From IMG/VR virus record IMGVR_UViG_3300036770_008729, positions 186,001-250,000 of that record: 64,000 nucleotides of DNA. One strand, written 5' to 3'. Under the pieces are notes generated by a model. That model did no database searches. It saw nothing but the letters and a program-made list of their open reading frames with translations, and was not told the origin of the DNA. This document shows positions 56,296 through 60,640 of the stretch, piece by piece; within the stretch, counting starts at the first letter, position 1; each line of letters opens with the position of its first letter. Made by a program: the position numbers and the translations under genes.

Positions 56296-57606
56296 TTATT
56301 GTTCATCTGATAGAGAGTAGTTGATTTCATCCAGAATTGAATCGGTTGGGAATTTTTCTCCTCTTTTATTATAAAAGAAACCATCTCTAAATTTTACCAA
56401 TTCGGAATCATCATTCATATTATCAGGTAATACACAATCATTCCATAATTCGATAATTTGATTAGGTGTAGTAGTTTTGCCAATTTCCACTCTTAATACT
56501 TCGAGTTCTTCTGGAATTTCAATTTGGGGTTCTTGCTCTGATTTAGCTCCTTGTTCTGCTTTTATACGAGCTTCTATTTCTTTGGCATGATCTTCTAAGT
56601 TCTTTGCTGAGGCATCTGCCTTTCTAATAGGATTGCCTTTTTCGTCCTTAATTAGATTGCCGTCTTTATCTAAAAGAAAGTCTTCTTCATATTCTGGTAG
56701 CAACCCTAACTTTTTACGTTGTTCTAAATCTTTTTTATCTCTTTCTCTAATACCAGCAGCGGCTCTTTTATAAGTCTCTGGATTTAATTCTTCATTAACG
56801 AATGATTCAAATAATTTTAGGTATTTCATATTATTTTTACTTTCAGCAACTGATTTTTCAGACTCATCAATTACTCTTTTAAGTTCAGCTGTATTATCAA
56901 CACTAACAACTTCATCAAATCCTTCTTTTGATAAAACATCTTTTATTTTTTCTTCATCAAAAGGAATGCCTTTATCATCTTGTAAGTCATATGATGTAAA
57001 CATTCTATCAAATGCAGCAGGTGGTATAGTTTTAGATTTACCTTTAGCTTTCATTTCTTCTGATCTTTTAGCTGCCATTTTTTTGATAATTTCTTCAGCT
57101 CCTTTGAAGTTAAAAACAACTGCTACTTTATGATATTCGCCTTCAACACCTTCAATAACTTTAAGTGCTCCTTTTCTTGAACCAGAGTTCATATTGGTCA
57201 TATCGACTACAATATTTTCTTTTCCTTTACCTTCGGCAATTCTTTTGTTAAATATATCTTGAATTTTACCGTTAGCTTCTAAAACTCTATCATAAGAAAG
57301 TGGTGCCCAAGTCATATAAGCTGGTGATTTAATAACGGTGCCATATTTTTCATTTTTATCACCTTCTTTTTCAACATCTTTAATGGGTAATGAGAAAAGG
57401 TCATCATATGTCCAACCATACTCTGCATACTCTTCAGCAACTTTTTCGACAATATCATCTCTATTTATTACAAATGGTTGTATTTCACCAAATTTGGTTT
57501 TTATCCAAGTTGATTTACCTACAGATGGAGGTCCAATAAGAACATATATTGTTTTATCTTTAACTTCTTCACCTTCAAATACTCTGAAATTTTTAATATT
57601 CCTCAT
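56296..57606 (-). CDS. P-loop kinase (AAA_33 / PNK-like) with N-terminal and internal CTS-like motifs
   Basis: GPPSVGKSTW, INRDDI, VVDMTNM..SR; MRNIKNFRVFE and MKYLKLFESFVNEE. Confidence 0.8.
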   Translation of the reverse strand: MRNIKNFRVFEGEEVKDKTIYVLIGPPSVGKSTWIKTKFGEIQPFVINRDDIVEKVAEEYAEYGWTYDDLFSLPIKDVEKEGDKNEKYGTVIKSPAYMTWAPLSYDRVLEANGKIQDIFNKRIAEGKGKENIVVDMTNMNSGSRKGALKVIEGVEGEYHKVAVVFNFKGAEEIIKKMAAKRSEEMKAKGKSKTIPPAAFDRMFTSYDLQDDKGIPFDEEKIKDVLSKEGFDEVVSVDNTAELKRVIDESEKSVAESKNNMKYLKLFESFVNEELNPETYKRAAAGIRERDKKDLEQRKKLGLLPEYEEDFLLDKDGNLIKDEKGNPIRKADASAKNLEDHAKEIEARIKAEQGAKSEQEPQIEIPEELEVLRVEIGKTTTPNQIIELWNDCVLPDNMNDDSELVKFRDGFFYNKRGEKFPTDSILDEINYSLSDEQ

Positions 57607-57697
57607 GCTATTATATTTCCTTTTTTATTTATAGTATATATTATAAATTGAGGAGATATTTTTAATAATCAGTTCAACGGTGTATTGGACTCTTTTG

Positions 57698-57810
57698 TAG
57701 TCAGGACAGGAATCGAACCTGCATGTGGGCCTTGTGTGTATTTCAACTATACTGCGGGTTTATCCACTCCGTTTAACTATTCGGTGCGTTTACCATTTCG
57801 CTACCTGACT
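57698..57810 (-). ncRNA. tRNA-scaffold RNA A (113 nt)
   Basis: AGTCAGG/CCTGACT acceptor, GCG/CGC D-stem, GCAGG-TTCGATT-CCTGT T-arm, no canonical anticodon arm. Confidence 0.75.
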
Positions 57811-57812
57811 AT

Positions 57813-57893
57813 TTGAGGATGAGAAGCCCTCTGTGTTGGTAGTAACTCAACTATCTACATTTACTCATCTCCTTTCTCAAGGGAACAACACAA
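57813..57893 (-). ncRNA. Structured RNA, kissing-loop type, copy 1
   Basis: Conserved ends shared with 58888-58981. Confidence 0.55.
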
Positions 57894-57976
57894 AAAATTA
57901 GAGTTGTTTCGGGAGCTTCACCCGCCTTCGAATATACTTGTATCTCTCAGTTAAGAGTCAATACGAGCTTTTTACT

Positions 57977-58348
57977 TTACAACTCAAATAGTATATTATT
58001 TAATTTCATTTCTCTTATTTTTTCATTTAAGTAAGGTCTTTTAGAAAGCATTGACCATACTGGTCCATAATTGTTAATTAGTGGTTTTGTATGGATTGTG
58101 ATATCAGATATATTTAATGTGTAGTCCATTTTTACATAGCCATATCTTTTATCTGCTTTTGCAACACCGGTAGATTCTACTCTGATAAATTCATCAGATA
58201 TGTTAATAATGTTATATTCCCACATATCACCAGCTTCTTCATATCCAGAGTCGTTAGGTATAAACAACCTAAATTGGACTATTGGATCATAAACAAATCC
58301 TAGACTGGCAAATATATCAATCAGGTCTTTAAGTATTTTATTTTTCAT
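57977..58348 (-). CDS. Hypothetical protein with tag (IREMKLNNIL)
   Basis: ORF track. Confidence 0.7.
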   Translation of the reverse strand: MKNKILKDLIDIFASLGFVYDPIVQFRLFIPNDSGYEEAGDMWEYNIINISDEFIRVESTGVAKADKRYGYVKMDYTLNISDITIHTKPLINNYGPVWSMLSKRPYLNEKIREMKLNNILFEL

Positions 58349-58452
58349 AAATTATTAAAACCAATATAAGCAATTATTATTACTAGTATCATAAGGATTA
58401 AACATCCATTATCTTCTGCACCAATTGGGTCGTTATCTAAATTATCATTCAT
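58345..58452 (-). CDS. 35-aa single-TM peptide (MNDNLDNDPIGAEDNGCLILMILVIIIAYIGFNNL)
   Basis: Translated manually; ATGA overlap with next gene. Confidence 0.5.
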   Translation of the reverse strand: MNDNLDNDPIGAEDNGCLILMILVIIIAYIGFNNL

Positions 58453-58457
58453 AAATG

Positions 58458-58563
58458 TAGTCAGGACAGGACTCGAACCTATAATCTGAATAACCTATAT
58501 CATCTTGATTTATTACCAATGATATTTTGTATTCACGCTTTAACCCAATTTCGCCACCTGACT
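58458..58563 (-). ncRNA. tRNA-scaffold RNA B (106 nt)
   Basis: Same acceptor; ATAGG-TTCGAGT-CCTGT T-arm; elongated helix in place of anticodon arm. Confidence 0.75.
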
Positions 58564-58569
58564 AATTAA

Positions 58570-58709
58570 AATATGAAGGCATATCGGTCGTTCCCAAGTT
58601 TGAATGATTAACCCCTGCCATACTCTTTGACTCGCTAAAGTCATACCATTTGAGATGTTAATCCTTGTCTGATTGGACTATACGTAACTCATCCACTCAG
58701 CTTCATATT
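58570..58709 (-). ncRNA. Stem-closed RNA element (140 nt)
   Basis: Terminal IR aatatgaag/cttcatatt between scaffolds B and C. Confidence 0.45.
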
Positions 58710-58712
58710 GTG

Positions 58713-58883
58713 TAGTCAGGACAGGACTTGAACCTGTATGTTTAGTTTTTACACTTTCACTTTTGATCAGATACTTGTGAAGGATGTTAATCAGACTTCG
58801 GTGAGATCAAATCACCTACACATCTACTCTAAACTTAACCTACCCTTTAGGATTTTCACGTCTACTAATTCCGTCACCTGACT
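58713..58883 (-). ncRNA. tRNA-scaffold RNA C (171 nt)
   Basis: Same acceptor; covarying D-stem ACG/CGT; ACAGG-TTCAAGT-CCTGT; multibranch insert. Confidence 0.75.
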
Positions 58884-58887
58884 ATAT

Positions 58888-58981
58888 TTGAGGATGAGAA
58901 GTCCTCTGTGTTGTAGAAGATTACACATCTATTCTTCTCTTTGCATTTCAGTTTCATTCCTTTCTCAAGGGAACAACACAA
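58888..58981 (-). ncRNA. Structured RNA, kissing-loop type, copy 2
   Basis: TGTGTTG/CAACACA stem, CCTT-GAGA-AAGG, GAGGA-CTTCTCA-TCCTC. Confidence 0.55.
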
Positions 58982-58988
58982 TATTTTA

Positions 58989-59203
58989 TAAACAACTACC
59001 GCCTTCTAAGTTGGGTGTTTGTATAGGCCCAAACCCCTATACTCCATCCTTTACATAATTTTTCAATGTATCTATAAACACATTAACCTAAACCACCCAC
59101 ATCTTAGAAATGTGAGGTAACTCTTCCTACTCTGACATGATTAATAATGACCGTTGATAATCATTAATAGAGTCAATATTTAGTGTTAATCAGTAGTTGT
59201 TTA
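58989..59203 (-). ncRNA. Stem-closed RNA element (215 nt)
   Basis: 13-bp terminal stem with a G-U pair on the minus strand; internal hairpins. Confidence 0.5.
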
Positions 59204-59206
59204 ATA

Positions 59207-59218
59207 TTTCAAAGAACT
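59207..59218 (-). promoter_or_regulatory. boxA-like AGTTCTTTGAAA
   Basis: 3' of scaffold D; repeated 3' of element E. Confidence 0.45.
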
Positions 59219-59223
59219 ATTTG

Positions 59224-59345
59224 TAGTCAGGACAGGATTCGAACCTGTAAGGTAACATTCGGTTTCAAGACTCTCCTCTATACCGATCAGAGGATGTAGT
59301 TACCACTTTACTCGTCTAATGCGTCTACCATTCCGCCACCTGACT
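59224..59345 (-). ncRNA. tRNA-scaffold RNA D (122 nt)
   Basis: Same acceptor; GCG-GAATGGTAGA-CGC Leu/Ser-type D arm; ACAGG-TTCGAAT-CCTGT. Confidence 0.75.
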
Positions 59346-59350
59346 ATGAA

Positions 59351-59422
59351 ATACCGATGCCTTTACTTTCACGAGGACTTGCGTGTCTTCTTAACATTAC
59401 TGTCTTAGGACCCCATCGGTAT
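59351..59422 (-). ncRNA. Stem-closed RNA element (72 nt)
   Basis: IR ataccgatg/catcggtat. Confidence 0.45.
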
Positions 59423-59426
59423 ATTA

Positions 59427-59653
59427 TGAATCAATCAAGAGCACTTATCTTTATGTTCAGAAGGTCATTCTCTATTCCACAAATTAATTTTACAGATGGT
59501 AGTACTTTTACAAAAACTTTTGCGTGTTTTATGCTCGGACTTATACACGTTATCAGCCATTAAAAAAGCAGGCCTATCGTAAACACTTACTCAAAGGATG
59601 GACATCAAGGAGCCTAATCCCCAATGAATTGGGTTTAACCAGTGATTGATTCA
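59427..59653 (-). ncRNA. Stem-closed RNA element (227 nt)
   Basis: Perfect 11-bp IR tgaatcaatca/tgattgattca. Confidence 0.45.
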
Positions 59654-59674
59654 ATATATTCAAAGAACTATTTG

Positions 59675-59750
59675 TCGTTAGGGTAGGACTCGAACCTACA
59701 ATCTTTCGGGATTTTCACCCGAACGCTCTATCAAATTGAGCCACCTAACT
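59675..59750 (-). tRNA. tRNA-Phe-like element with damaged anticodon arm (pseudo-tRNA E)
   Basis: AGTTAGG acceptor (A1-G72 mismatch), GCTC/GAGC D-stem, TTCGGG-TGAAAAT-CCCGAA, GTAGG-TTCGAGT-CCTAC. Confidence 0.6.
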
Positions 59751-59756
59751 ATAATA

Positions 59757-59788
59757 CAAAGATAATAATAATTTTTATTATGACCAAA
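59757..59788 (-). promoter_or_regulatory. Bacteroidota promoter TTTG-N20-TATCTTTG driving the ncRNA array
   Basis: -7 box ends 6 nt before the first base of element E. Confidence 0.65.
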
Positions 59789-59808
59789 TTTATTCTGCTT
59801 TTAAACAA

Positions 59809-59835
59809 TACAAAAAAACGTAGCGGATTTTTGTA
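59809..59835. repeat. Inverted copy of the TACAAAAATCCGCTACGTTTTTTTGTA palindrome
   Basis: Reverse complement of copies at 54541, 54850 and 56211. Confidence 0.85.
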
Positions 59836-59839
59836 TTGT

Positions 59840-60640
59840 TTAAATTGGTAGATTTACTTTGGATAATATTTGGTTCGAAACATGAGTGTAAATTTCAGTA
59901 GTTTTTACATTTGAGTGACCTAATATTTTCTGAATTACTCTTAAATCAGTACCATTTTCCAATAGATTTGTTGCACAACTATGTCTCAATTGGTGAATGT
60001 GATATTTTTCACCCAAATATTTTTTAACAATTTGATTACAGCTACCAGAACTATATTGTAAACTATTTTGACCATTGAAAAGGTATTCTTTTGGTCTATA
60101 TTCTTTAAAATATTCTCTAAGTAATTCTAATATTTTCTGGGATAGGGGTAAGACTCTATCTTTTCTACCTTTAGCATTTTTAATATGAATAATCATTCTT
60201 TTGGAATCGATATCTTCAATTTTAAGGTTAATTACTTCCGATACTCTTAATCCGACTGAATAAGTTAAAGATAATATCGTTTTATGTTTAAGATTAGTAA
60301 TTTTAGATAATTGTTCTTTAATGTAATCACCATCAATAACCTGTGGTAACTTCTTCTCAGATTTGGGTCTTTTGAAACTAACCTTATCATATTTCTTATT
60401 AAGTCCGAATTTGTAGAGGAAACGGATTGCGTTAATAACCTGATTTTGTTGTGAAACAGAAGTAAAACTATAAGTATCTAAATATGATTGAAAATCATTA
60501 GATGTGAGTCTAGTTGGTGAAATTTTTATTGTAGCTAAAAATTGATTAATATAATGGAGATAGGATTTTATTGTCCTATCTGAGTAATTTAAATACTTCA
60601 ATTTTTGATTACAAATTTCGTAATAATCTGTTTTTTTCAT
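59840..60640 (-). CDS. Tyrosine recombinase (integron-integrase-like N-domain, XerD-like catalytic domain)
   Basis: GLRVSE, NAKGRKDR, HQLRHS, LGH, TEIYTHV; catalytic set intact. Confidence 0.92.
   Translation of the reverse strand: MKKTDYYEICNQKLKYLNYSDRTIKSYLHYINQFLATIKISPTRLTSNDFQSYLDTYSFTSVSQQNQVINAIRFLYKFGLNKKYDKVSFKRPKSEKKLPQVIDGDYIKEQLSKITNLKHKTILSLTYSVGLRVSEVINLKIEDIDSKRMIIHIKNAKGRKDRVLPLSQKILELLREYFKEYRPKEYLFNGQNSLQYSSGSCNQIVKKYLGEKYHIHQLRHSCATNLLENGTDLRVIQKILGHSNVKTTEIYTHVSNQILSKVNLPI

What the first reader, a model, noticed from the sequence alone, without database searches (positions are those of the whole stretch)
57813..58981. Duplicated kissing-loop RNA immediately 5' of scaffolds A and C
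Seen on the minus strand: a TGTGTTG/CAACACA stem enclosing CCTT-GAGA-AAGG and a variable hairpin, then GAGG[A/G]-CTTCTCA-TCCTC (A-U to G-U compatible change). TGAGAA and TTCTCA are complementary, so a pseudoknot is possible. Inference: a processing element, ribozyme or protein-binding RNA linked to the scaffolds.
Basis: partly seen in the sequence, partly recalled or inferred. Interest (0 to 1): 0.6.

Follow-up and report, generated by a model that had tools for sequence, protein, structure and literature searches.

The report
New phage RNA motif before tRNAs
The two repeats are copies of a widespread, apparently undescribed structured RNA of uncultivated freshwater jumbo phages that sits 4-6 bases in front of tRNA or tRNA-like genes; its fold is well supported, but what it does is unknown.

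Summary
Both copies lie on the minus strand, at 58980-58888 and 57892-57813. Each ends 6 or 4 nt before a tRNA-like gene with acceptor stem AGUCAGG/CCUGACU.

They belong to a large family. A covariance model finds 189 instances (132 distinct) in about 200 IMG/VR phage loci, with 1-3 copies per jumbo-phage genome. Rfam 15 and GenBank phages give no match. Among 185,579 prokaryote species genomes there is one hit, on a Lake Mendota MAG contig.

- **Fold:** P1 (GUGUUG/CAACAC), P2 (UUCC/GGAA with a conserved 9-nt loop), a hypervariable P3 hairpin, then a 3' hairpin P4 (GAGGR/UCCUC with loop CUUCUCA).
- **Support:** P1 and P2 show compensatory changes. G-U pairs outnumber A-C pairs 57 to 10, so the structure is RNA on the tRNA strand.
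- **Kissing pair:** the loop complementarity (UGAGAA with UUCUCA) is kept in 97-99.8% of cells. Both loops are nearly invariant, so covariation cannot prove the kiss.

Best reading (about 45%): an autonomous small RNA module in phage tRNA/tRNA-like arrays, whose 3' end is made by RNase P at the next tRNA. Rivals are a cis-acting tRNA leader, a new self-cleaving ribozyme, and a DNA-level site. Function is unresolved.

The parts
58888..58980 (-). Motif copy 1 (93 nt): P1, P2, P3 and P4 plus the conserved AA tail
   Evidence: Sequence. Model R1 scores it 85.3 bits, E 8.6e-15.
57813..57892 (-). Motif copy 2 (80 nt)
   Evidence: Sequence. Model R1 scores it 74.4 bits, E 1.7e-12.
58974..58979 (-). 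Copy 1, P1 5' strand GUGUUG; pairs with 58908-58913 (CAACAC). In copy 2: 57886-57891 with 57833-57838.
   Evidence: P1 is in the minimum-energy fold of 127 of 130 homologues. In alignment A2, 4 of 6 pairs show changes on both sides.
58957..58973 (-). Copy 1, P2 hairpin: stem UUCC (58970-58973) with GGAA (58957-58960); loop L2 CUUGAGAAA (58961-58969), with UGAGAA at 58962-58967. In copy 2: 57869-57885.
   Evidence: All 4 pairs show changes on both sides. Variants fit only this register.
58915..58956 (-). Copy 1, purine-rich J2/3 and variable hairpin P3 (AGAAGA 58933-58938 with UCUUCU 58915-58920), followed by the conserved junction A at 58914
   Evidence: Fold. Across the family: 118 distinct variable regions in 87 clusters, a hairpin abutting P1 in 87 of 130, and the junction A in 107 of 131.
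58890..58906 (-). Copy 1, P4 hairpin: GAGGA (58902-58906) with UCCUC (58890-58894); loop L4 CUUCUCA (58895-58901). In copy 2: 57815-57831, with GAGGG (G-U).
   Evidence: L4 positions C102 and U103 have no variant anywhere in IMG/VR when the flanking sequence is canonical.
58884..58889 (-). Copy 1, conserved AA plus A/U-rich linker (AAAUAU) up to the tRNA-like +1. In copy 2: 57811-57814 (AAAU).
   Evidence: The AA is conserved in at least 90% of sequences. Linker of 4-6 nt in 92 of 100 linked cases, U commonest at -1 by inspection.
58713..58883 (-). tRNA-like element S2 (171 nt): acceptor AGUCAGG/CCUGACU, D and T arms, about 100-nt insert in place of the anticodon region, discriminator A followed by CA
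   Evidence: families D1, D2. Neither ARAGORN nor Rfam calls it a tRNA.
57698..57810 (-). tRNA-like element S4 (113 nt), same acceptor stem
   Evidence: Rfam tRNA model 42.5 bits with a 40-nt insertion. About 90% identical copies in L199, L007, L084 and L117.
59224..59345 (-). tRNA-like element S1 (122 nt), no motif in front of it
58458..58563 (-). tRNA-like element S3 (106 nt), no motif in front of it
   Evidence: Rfam tRNA model 35.3 bits.
58989..59203 (-). Separate structured RNA module 'X' directly upstream of copy 1, closed by a 13-bp terminal stem (59191-59203 with 58989-59001)
   Evidence: Fold z-score -3.65. RNA-library contigs from 4 runs in 3 studies lie on 59003-59191 with 0-3 mismatches. 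No Rfam hit.

Best explanation
The element is an autonomous structured small RNA of about 80-105 nt and belongs to a phage RNA family with no entry in Rfam 15. It is encoded as one of several kinds of module inside the tRNA/tRNA-like arrays of uncultivated freshwater and subsurface jumbo phages.

Fold (shown by comparison): P1 and P2 form one continuous 10-bp helix capped by the conserved loop L2. A hypervariable hairpin, P3, branches off at the junction. A 3' hairpin, P4, carries a 7-nt loop, L4. L2 (UGAGAA) and L4 (UUCUCA) are complementary over 6 nt.

Mechanism (inferred): the RNA is transcribed on the tRNA strand together with the array. Host RNase P cuts at +1 of the tRNA or tRNA-like element that starts 4-6 nt downstream, usually with U at -1, and so releases the RNA with a short A/U tail. 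Its 5' end comes from transcription start or from 3' processing of a preceding tRNA. The degenerate AGUCAGG tRNA-likes therefore act as processing punctuation. The released compact RNA then acts in trans as a sequence-specific binding platform for a protein or another RNA. What it binds is unknown.
For: - **Family and distribution.** 189 hits (132 distinct) in about 200 IMG/VR loci. Genomes of 170-320 kb carry 1-3 copies, far fewer than their tRNAs.
- **RNA-level structure.** P1 and P2 show compensatory changes. G-U or U-G pairs number 57 against 10 A-C or C-A. No reading frame is conserved, and lengths are not multiples of three.
- **Coupling to RNase P substrates.** 100 of 143 instances are followed by a tRNA or tRNA-like element. 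The linker is 4-6 nt in 92 of those 100, against 17% positives at random positions. The downstream genes include bona fide tRNAs of many identities.
- **Autonomy.** About 30% are not followed by a tRNA. By inspection, 3 instances end in P4 plus a U-tract, like a stand-alone sRNA gene. One P3 subtype precedes 11 different downstream elements. Only 28 of 135 have a tRNA directly upstream.
- **Neighbouring modules behave the same way.** Other inter-tRNA-like modules in the same arrays are conserved across phages. One of them, module X, appears as short contigs in four metatranscriptome runs. Rfam's freshwater-1 RNA lies in one such array.
- **Precedent.** GOLLD and ROOL are phage RNAs of unknown function encoded near tRNA islands (PMC5737381, PMC12286853).
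Against: - No read evidence shows the motif itself as a discrete, accumulated RNA. The RNA-library contigs that cover neighbouring module X stop before it. Contigs cannot show RNA ends.
- The very tight and constant spacing to tRNA +1 would fit a cis role in tRNA maturation at least as well.
- No binding partner is known, and no protein gene is co-conserved nearby.
- RNase P cleavage is inferred from tRNA geometry, not observed.
- Helix sequences are far more conserved than structure alone requires, which is unexplained.
Confidence: 0.45

Rival explanations
1. The motif is a cis-acting 5' leader of the downstream tRNA or tRNA-like element. It is a folded domain that controls RNase P access or timing, protects the precursor 5' end, or senses a ligand or protein (riboswitch-like). 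It would have no function once cut off.
For: The motif ends 4-6 nt before tRNA +1 in 92 of 100 linked cases, with a conserved AA and usually U at -1. It precedes tRNAs of many identities, which suggests a generic role. P4 lies outside the P1 closure, like an expression platform whose loop could dock on the L2 loop.
Against: Only 1-3 of the dozens of tRNAs per genome have it, and tightly packed canonical tRNA runs lack it. About 30% of copies have no tRNA downstream yet keep the full conserved sequence. A mere stabiliser would not need about 55 nearly invariant nucleotides. The three-way junction has no conserved ligand-pocket-like core, apart from one A.
Confidence: 0.2
2. The motif is a new class of self-cleaving ribozyme that cuts array transcripts at or near its own boundary. 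This would parallel the HDV-like theta ribozymes that trim phage tRNA 3' trailers.
For: Phage tRNA-adjacent ribozymes exist (theta ribozymes, PMC10879173). The motif has invariant loop nucleotides and a candidate pseudoknot, which is typical of small ribozymes. In 28 of 135 cases it starts 3-5 nt after a tRNA discriminator. A P-loop kinase with faint polynucleotide-kinase similarity lies next to the array in this window.
Against: No Rfam ribozyme family matches, even at E up to 10. The strand order is not the HDV nested double pseudoknot. Neither boundary coincides exactly with a tRNA end: the gaps are 3-5 nt upstream and 4-6 nt downstream, with variable sequence, so cleavage there would not make mature ends. 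Conservation sits in helices and terminal loops rather than around a junction. The kinase is not co-conserved with the motif in other loci. Some copies end in a terminator-like U-tract.
Confidence: 0.15
3. The conservation acts on DNA. The motif would be a recombination or cassette-shuffling site, for example for the adjacent Xer/integron-like tyrosine recombinase, or a promoter, rather than an RNA.
For: A tyrosine recombinase with integron-integrase and XerA-like matches lies beside the array at 59840-60640. The layout of conserved flanks around a variable centre, together with the modular shuffling seen, recalls attC sites and the PeSL cassettes of T4-type phages; that comparison is from my own knowledge.
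Against: G-U pairs outnumber A-C pairs 57 to 10 on the tRNA strand only. Compensatory changes preserve RNA helices. A homologue of the recombinase appears in only 1 of about 200 loci. The motif is always on the tRNA strand at a fixed distance from +1. No sigma-70-like promoter is predicted at either copy.
Confidence: 0.05

Closest known systems
GOLLD and ROOL RNAs (Rfam; PMC5737381, PMC12286853)
   Same: They are orphan structured RNAs of phages and prophages, encoded near tRNA islands and probably co-transcribed with tRNAs. Their function is unknown. Complementary loops in them were first read as tertiary contacts, and at least one (ROOL bridge B4) proved to be an intermolecular kissing loop in a multimeric cage.
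   Different: They are 500-800+ nt with dozens of helices; this motif is 80-105 nt with four. There is no sequence or model similarity. Multimerisation of this motif is untested.
freshwater-1 RNA motif (RF02979)
   Same: It is an orphan RNA motif. One copy lies inside one of the same tRNA/tRNA-like arrays that carry this motif (L198).
   Different: It is 62 nt long, matched by its own Rfam model, and absent from this window.
Theta (minimal HDV-like) ribozymes next to phage tRNAs (PMC10879173)
   Same: Small structured RNAs placed directly beside tRNA genes in phage genomes, proposed to serve tRNA end formation.
   Different: Theta ribozymes sit within 1-5 nt of the tRNA 3' end, have the HDV nested double pseudoknot, and occur mostly in gut phages. 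This motif is anchored to the tRNA 5' side, has a different strand topology, comes from freshwater and subsurface phages, and has no demonstrated cleavage.
phi29 pRNA (Rfam RF00044)
   Same: Both have a three-way junction and two mutually complementary loops. In pRNA those loops pair between molecules to build a ring.
   Different: pRNA is tied to the DNA-packaging motor of small phi29-like phages, its loop pairing is 4 bp, and it has no tRNA linkage. There is no model match.
MALAT1/mascRNA and MHV68 tRNA-miRNA units (from my own knowledge)
   Same: A tRNA-like element placed immediately downstream of another RNA recruits RNase P, so that the upstream RNA gets a defined 3' end.
   Different: Those are eukaryotic or herpesviral systems. 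In them the upstream RNA is a long non-coding RNA, or the tRNA is the upstream part. No homology.
Stable 'species 1 and 2' RNAs in the phage T4 tRNA cluster (from my own knowledge)
   Same: Small stable RNAs of unknown function encoded inside a phage tRNA gene cluster and matured with the tRNAs.
   Different: The comparison is from memory only. No similarity test was run against T4 specifically, and the search of GenBank phages found no match to the motif.

Membership tests
Any Rfam 15 family (including hammerhead, twister, twister-sister, pistol, hatchet, HDV-like, hairpin, VS, Drum, manA, pRNA, GOLLD, ROOL, freshwater-1) | A covariance-model score at or near the family's gathering threshold | tested here: not met
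   cmscan of 57000-60500 at E up to 10 gives no hit overlapping either copy. The whole-window gathering search gives tRNA only.
HDV-like / theta ribozyme | Nested double pseudoknot in the strand order P1-P2-P3-P1'-P4-P2', with a short conserved P3/L3 and a variable P4 | tested here: not met
   The order here is P1 5', hairpin P2, variable hairpin P3, P1 3', hairpin P4. The variable helix lies before P1 3', not after it, and nothing downstream of P4 could form a P2 3' strand.
HDV-like / theta ribozyme | Cleavage site within 1-5 nt of a tRNA 3' end | tested here: inconclusive
   28 of 135 instances start 3-5 nt after a tRNA discriminator. 107 of 135 have no adjacent upstream tRNA.
Self-cleaving ribozyme (any class) | Site-specific self-scission giving a 2',3'-cyclic phosphate and a 5'-OH | not testable with these tools
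   This needs in vitro transcription. The RNA-library data available were assembled contigs, which cannot show RNA ends.
Intramolecular kissing-loop / pseudoknot RNA | Covariation between the two loops | tested here: inconclusive
   97-99.8% of cells pair, but no pair in the alignments shows changes on both sides. Canonically flanked copies across IMG/VR have no variant at L4 C102 or U103. At C104 the only change is C to U, which keeps G-U (8 contigs); one lineage, L133, is compensated to UAAGA/UCUUA. One sequence, L176, breaks the pairing.
Riboswitch | Sits in the 5' UTR of protein-coding genes, with an expression platform (terminator or ribosome-binding-site sequestration) and a conserved ligand pocket | tested here: not met
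   70% are followed by a tRNA or tRNA-like element, not an ORF. P4 is followed by AA(A/C)AU rather than a U-tract, except in 3 cases. The three-way junction has no conserved core apart from one A. Ligand binding is not testable here.
Intrinsic terminator | A GC-rich hairpin followed directly by a U-tract | tested here: not met
   In the window, P4 is followed by AAAUAU or AAAU. The scan calls only the complementary (+) strand of P4 terminator-like. A U-tract follows P4 in 3 homologues: L069, L104 and L193.
tRNA (for the downstream 'scaffolds') | 7-bp acceptor stem, D arm, 5-bp T arm with a T-loop, discriminator base | tested here: met
   Present in S1 to S4. The Rfam tRNA model hits S3 and S4.
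tRNA (for the downstream 'scaffolds') | Canonical anticodon arm (5-bp stem, 7-nt loop) and a total length of about 72-93 nt | tested here: not met
   ARAGORN calls none of S1 to S4. They are 106-171 nt long, with 40-100-nt inserts.
Integron attC-like or recombinase site (DNA level) | General co-occurrence with the recombinase, and structure constraints that are symmetric between the two strands | tested here: not met
   tblastn finds a recombinase homologue in 1 of about 200 loci. G-U outnumbers A-C 57 to 10 on one strand only.
phi29-type pRNA | Three-way junction with two mutually complementary loops | tested here: met
   P1/P2/P3 junction, with L2 UGAGAA complementary to L4 UUCUCA. Note that L4 lies outside the junction.
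phi29-type pRNA | A match to the pRNA model, and a genomic link to the packaging ATPase and connector of phi29-like phages | tested here: not met
   No Rfam hit. The context is a tRNA array in jumbo phages of roughly 170-320 kb.
Protein-coding sequence | A conserved open reading frame, with indels in multiples of three | tested here: not met
   No frame on either strand is open in most of the 132 sequences. Lengths mod 3 split 58/37/37. The apparent GUG-UUG-UUC-CCU-UGA mini-ORF is broken by 1-nt loop insertions in variants.

The most novel reading that the evidence does not exclude
The L2-L4 complementarity may be intermolecular rather than intramolecular. If P4 stacks under the P1-P2 helix, the RNA is a rod of about 15 bp with complementary loops at opposite ends. 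It could then self-assemble head to tail into dimers, rings or filaments. That would make it a roughly 90-nt RNA-only quaternary assembly encoded in phage tRNA islands: a miniature counterpart of the ROOL and GOLLD cages and of the phi29 pRNA ring, with the hypervariable P3 arm displayed on the outside.

The evidence does not exclude this. The loops are invariant beyond what pairing needs. A single-nucleotide P1-P4 linker makes a coaxial three-helix intramolecular kiss geometrically awkward; this is my own reasoning, not a model. In ROOL, a loop pairing first read as tertiary proved to be quaternary (PMC12286853).
Probability: 0.15. Interest if true: 0.85.

Novelty: new variant of a known kind. 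Interest (0 to 1): 0.62.

Why it matters
Phage tRNA islands are known to harbour orphan RNAs (GOLLD, ROOL, freshwater-1) whose functions remain a long-standing puzzle. This motif adds a small, very abundant and extremely conserved member that is easy to synthesise and test.

It also exposes an organisation in which degenerate tRNA-likes with one shared acceptor stem alternate with diverse conserved RNA modules. That looks like a natural 'tRNA punctuation' system for producing many small RNAs from one phage transcript.

If the motif proves to be a ribozyme, a regulator of RNase P, or a self-assembling RNA, it would be a new RNA class with clear experimental handles. If it is only a stable leader, it still gives a useful marker for a large group of uncultivated freshwater jumbo phages.

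Tried and rejected
- **Known RNA families.** Rfam gathering and permissive searches gave nothing on the motif.
- **Deposited phages.** BLAST of the motif and of the 3.5-kb region against GenBank phages gave only chance-level hits.
- **Bacterial genomes.** A pattern scan of 185,579 species genomes gave one hit, on a Lake Mendota MAG contig labelled Phycisphaerales. I take it for a mis-binned phage contig, but did not check it.
- **Literature.** Searches by context and by literal sequence found no description. The only sequence hit was an unrelated paper. The 8,495 unnamed IMG/VR candidates of PMC10690425 could not be checked, because no supplement is held.
- **Guide-target idea.** The variable P3 region is no more complementary to the cargo of its own downstream tRNA-like than to non-cognate ones (Mann-Whitney p = 0.81).
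- **Co-conserved proteins.** Neither the adjacent recombinase nor the P-loop kinase is found near the motif elsewhere. The kinase's polynucleotide-kinase similarity is marginal.
- **Leader-peptide reading.** Rejected.
- **Sigma-70 promoter scan.** Uninformative: 14 sites found against 11.9 expected.
- **RNA reads.** Only assembled contigs were available. They show a neighbouring module and relatives' arrays in RNA libraries, but no ends for the motif.
- **Thermodynamics.** It is weak on its own. The z-scores are -1.9 and -0.2 for the two copies, and P2 appears in the minimum-energy fold of only 29 of 130 homologues. The case rests on comparison, not on folding energy.
- **Phage lineage.** 8 of 10 large ORFs have no PHROG match, so the host remains unknown.

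No alternative genetic code, large protein search or structure prediction was needed.
Full report
**1. What is in the window**

The window is bases 186001-250000 of a 281-kb IMG/VR virus record with about 30% G+C. Between 59750 and 57698 the minus strand carries an RNA-gene array:
- a tRNA at 59750-59674;
- four tRNA-like elements: S1 59345-59224, S2 58883-58713, S3 58563-58458 and S4 57810-57698.

All four share the acceptor stem AGUCAGG/CCUGACU, a D arm, a T arm and a discriminator A followed by CA. In place of a normal anticodon arm they carry 40-100-nt inserts. ARAGORN calls none of them. The Rfam tRNA model reaches S3 and S4 only.

The copies share an identical 24-nt 5' block and a 30/31-nt 3' block around a diverged middle.

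**2. It is a large family, not a local duplication**

A second anchor that left the P4 loop free gave more.

I aligned 81 instances (A1) and built covariance model R1 from them.
- R1 finds exactly two copies in the window's own genome.
- It finds 189 instances, 132 of them distinct, in about 200 fetched loci.
- It finds 1-3 copies in each of five further virus records of 170-320 kb.

The family was not found elsewhere:
- Rfam 15 gives no hit, even at E up to 10.
- GenBank phages give no match.
- 185,579 prokaryote species genomes give one hit, on a Lake Mendota MAG contig.
- No paper in the searchable library contains the conserved words.

DNA runs holding this stretch are labelled subsurface, soil and freshwater metagenomes, with small shares in marine, seawater and lake runs.

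**3. Structure**

The family consensus, 5' to 3', is:
- P1, GUGUUG pairing with CAACAC (6 bp);
- P2, UUCC pairing with GGAA (4 bp), continuous with P1 on the 5' strand, closing the loop L2, C-UUGAGAA-A;
- a purine-rich joining strand, J2/3;
- a hairpin P3 of variable length and sequence (118 distinct versions in 87 clusters);
- a junction A, present in 82%;
- the P1 3' strand, then one A;
- P4, GAGGR pairing with UCCUC, with the 7-nt loop L4, CUUCUCA;
- a conserved AA tail.

P1 and P2 are supported by compensatory changes. In alignment A2, 4 of 6 P1 pairs and 4 of 4 P2 pairs change on both sides, all five summary measures exceed every one of 500 shuffles, and the given register beats all slid registers. 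A3 agrees, more weakly. These alignments were fitted to the model, so the counts lean towards it.

Non-Watson-Crick cells are mostly G-U or U-G (57) rather than A-C or C-A (10). That places the structure in RNA read from the tRNA strand. No reading frame is conserved.

However, the variants UUUC/GAAA, GUCUU/AAGAC, GAUCC/GGAUC and CUUU/AAAG fit only the UUCC/GGAA register. Folding energy alone is unimpressive (z-scores -1.9 and -0.2).

**4. The kissing interaction**

UGAGAA in L2 and UUCUCA in L4 can pair in 97-99.8% of cells, but both loops hardly vary.
- IMG/VR-wide scans of canonically flanked copies found no variant at all at L4 positions C102 and U103.
- At C104 the only change is C to U, in 8 contigs. 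This keeps a G-U pair.
- One lineage, L133, also changed the partner G to A, giving UAAGA with UCUUA, a true compensation.
- One sequence, L176, breaks the pairing.

So the pairing is compatible with the data and weakly supported, but not demonstrated. The loops are under constraint beyond pairing.

Whether the pairing forms within one molecule or between molecules cannot be decided here. Two side-by-side stacks, P1+P2 (10 bp) and P4 plus the kiss (11 bp), would be a consistent intramolecular design. A rod with complementary loops at its two ends would instead favour intermolecular assembly. This is my geometric reasoning, not a computed model. In ROOL, a loop pairing first predicted as tertiary proved to be quaternary (PMC12286853).

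**5. Context**

- In 100 of 143 distinct instances a tRNA or tRNA-like element begins just downstream. The distance from the end of P4 is 4-6 nt in 92 of those 100. The same detector scores 17% at random positions in these tRNA-rich loci.
- The downstream genes include ordinary tRNAs (Arg-UCU, Arg-ACG, Leu-UAA, Leu-UAG, Met, Thr, Phe, Ile and others) as well as many AGUCAGG tRNA-likes. U is the commonest base at -1 by inspection.
- Only 28 of 135 instances have a tRNA 3' end directly upstream, 3-5 nt after the discriminator.
- About 30% are followed by something else: other conserved structured modules, a second motif copy, ORFs, or, in three cases, a U-tract that turns P4 into a terminator-like end.
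- Arrays such as L159 and L198 hold dozens of tRNAs and tRNA-likes. The motif precedes only a few of them, and it lies in the part of the array where AGUCAGG tRNA-likes alternate with gaps of 100-470 nt.
- The other gaps in this window are also conserved modules. The 59673-59342 stretch is 81% identical over 248 nt to L068, and 58711-58565 is 87% identical over 143 nt to L139 and L180. S4 itself is about 90% identical to copies in four contigs.
- The module just upstream of copy 1 (59203-58989) folds with a 13-bp closing stem (z-score -3.65). Short, nearly identical contigs from four aquatic metatranscriptome runs lie on it.
- Rfam's freshwater-1 RNA lies in one of these arrays.

**6. Interpretation**

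The most economical reading is an autonomous small RNA module. It would be transcribed with the array and released by RNase P acting on the tRNA or tRNA-like element that follows it. The degenerate tRNA-likes keep exactly the parts RNase P needs (acceptor stem, T arm and D arm), so they would serve as punctuation.

What is shown: the family, its fold, its strand and its spacing to tRNAs. What is inferred: the RNase P step, release as a stable RNA, and trans action.

Three points favour autonomy over a pure cis leader. Copies without a downstream tRNA stay fully conserved. The motif combines freely with different downstream genes. It is rare relative to tRNAs.

A cis role in RNase P processing, or a new self-cleaving ribozyme, remains a serious alternative. 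The theta ribozymes show that phages do place ribozymes beside tRNAs (PMC10879173). Against that, the topology here is not HDV-like, no Rfam ribozyme model matches, and neither boundary coincides with a mature tRNA end.

A DNA-level recombination site is unlikely. I found no guide-like complementarity between P3 and the downstream cargo.

**7. Novelty and verdict**

This is a new RNA family within a known phenomenon: orphan structured RNAs in phage tRNA islands, such as GOLLD, ROOL and freshwater-1. It may be hidden among the 8,495 unnamed IMG/VR candidates of PMC10690425, which I could not check.

Interest is moderately high. The motif is small, very widespread, exceptionally conserved, unannotated and directly testable. 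The most novel reading the evidence leaves open is a self-assembling RNA. Its function remains unknown.

Noticed in passing
window 58989-59203 (minus strand): A separate structured RNA of about 215 nt lies between S1 and motif copy 1, closed by a 13-bp terminal stem (fold z-score -3.65). Short contigs (163-188 nt, 0-3 mismatches) from four aquatic metatranscriptome runs in three studies lie on 59003-59191. This suggests an abundant stable RNA. There is no Rfam hit, and only a 38-nt match in L011 and L072.
   Followed up: partly
window 57698-59345 (minus strand); G000:C1:257878-257901: Four tRNA-like elements, plus a fifth outside the window, share the acceptor stem AGUCAGG/CCUGACU and the D and T arms, but carry 40-100-nt inserts in place of the anticodon region. 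The same acceptor stem recurs on many different tRNAs and tRNA-likes in other phage contigs (44 of 79 downstream elements).
   Followed up: partly
window 59342-59673 and 58565-58711 (minus strand): The other spacers between tRNA-likes are also conserved modules in other phages: 81% identity over 248 nt to L068, and 87% over 143 nt to L139 and L180. S4 is about 90% identical to copies in L199, L007, L084 and L117. The array looks like a shuffled set of distinct non-coding RNA families.
   Followed up: partly
window 59674-59750 (minus strand): The one tRNA that ARAGORN calls ('Phe', anticodon aaa) appears to have an enlarged anticodon loop of 8 nt (GUGAAAAA between UUCGG and CCGAA). Its identity and function are doubtful.
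   Followed up: no
window 59840-60640 (minus strand): A 266-aa tyrosine recombinase sits directly beside the RNA array. Its best NCBIfam matches are archaeal XerA/integron-integrase and XerC/D. It is not found next to the motif in other loci (1 of about 200).
   Followed up: partly
window 56296-57606 (minus strand): A 436-aa protein lies immediately downstream of S4. It has an N-terminal P-loop kinase domain (AAA_33) with only faint similarity to polynucleotide kinase. Its C-terminal half of about 230 aa has no match.
   Followed up: partly
loci L007, L017, L022, L035, L077, L092, L123, L009, L199 (just downstream of the motif): A recurrent module of about 100 nt, closed by the stem CUAUUAGUGAACUU...AAGAGCUGAUAG, sits between the motif and the next AGUCAGG tRNA-like. 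It looks like another unannotated RNA family of these arrays.
   Followed up: no
L198:3299-3360: Rfam's freshwater-1 RNA (RF02979, 82 bits) lies inside a tRNA array that also carries three copies of the motif. This ties that orphan metagenomic motif to these phages.
   Followed up: no
tRNA and tRNA-like 3' ends, e.g. window 58711-58713, 57696-57698, and many loci: The tRNAs and tRNA-likes inspected in these arrays mostly end with the discriminator base followed by C and then A/U-rich sequence (ACA, ACAAA, ACUA), not by an encoded CCA. A few have ACCA.
   Followed up: no
window 1-64000: 8 of the 10 large ORFs tested have no PHROG family at E below 1e-5, so the phage lineage is very poorly represented among known phages. 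IMG/VR labels the record a provirus.
   Followed up: no
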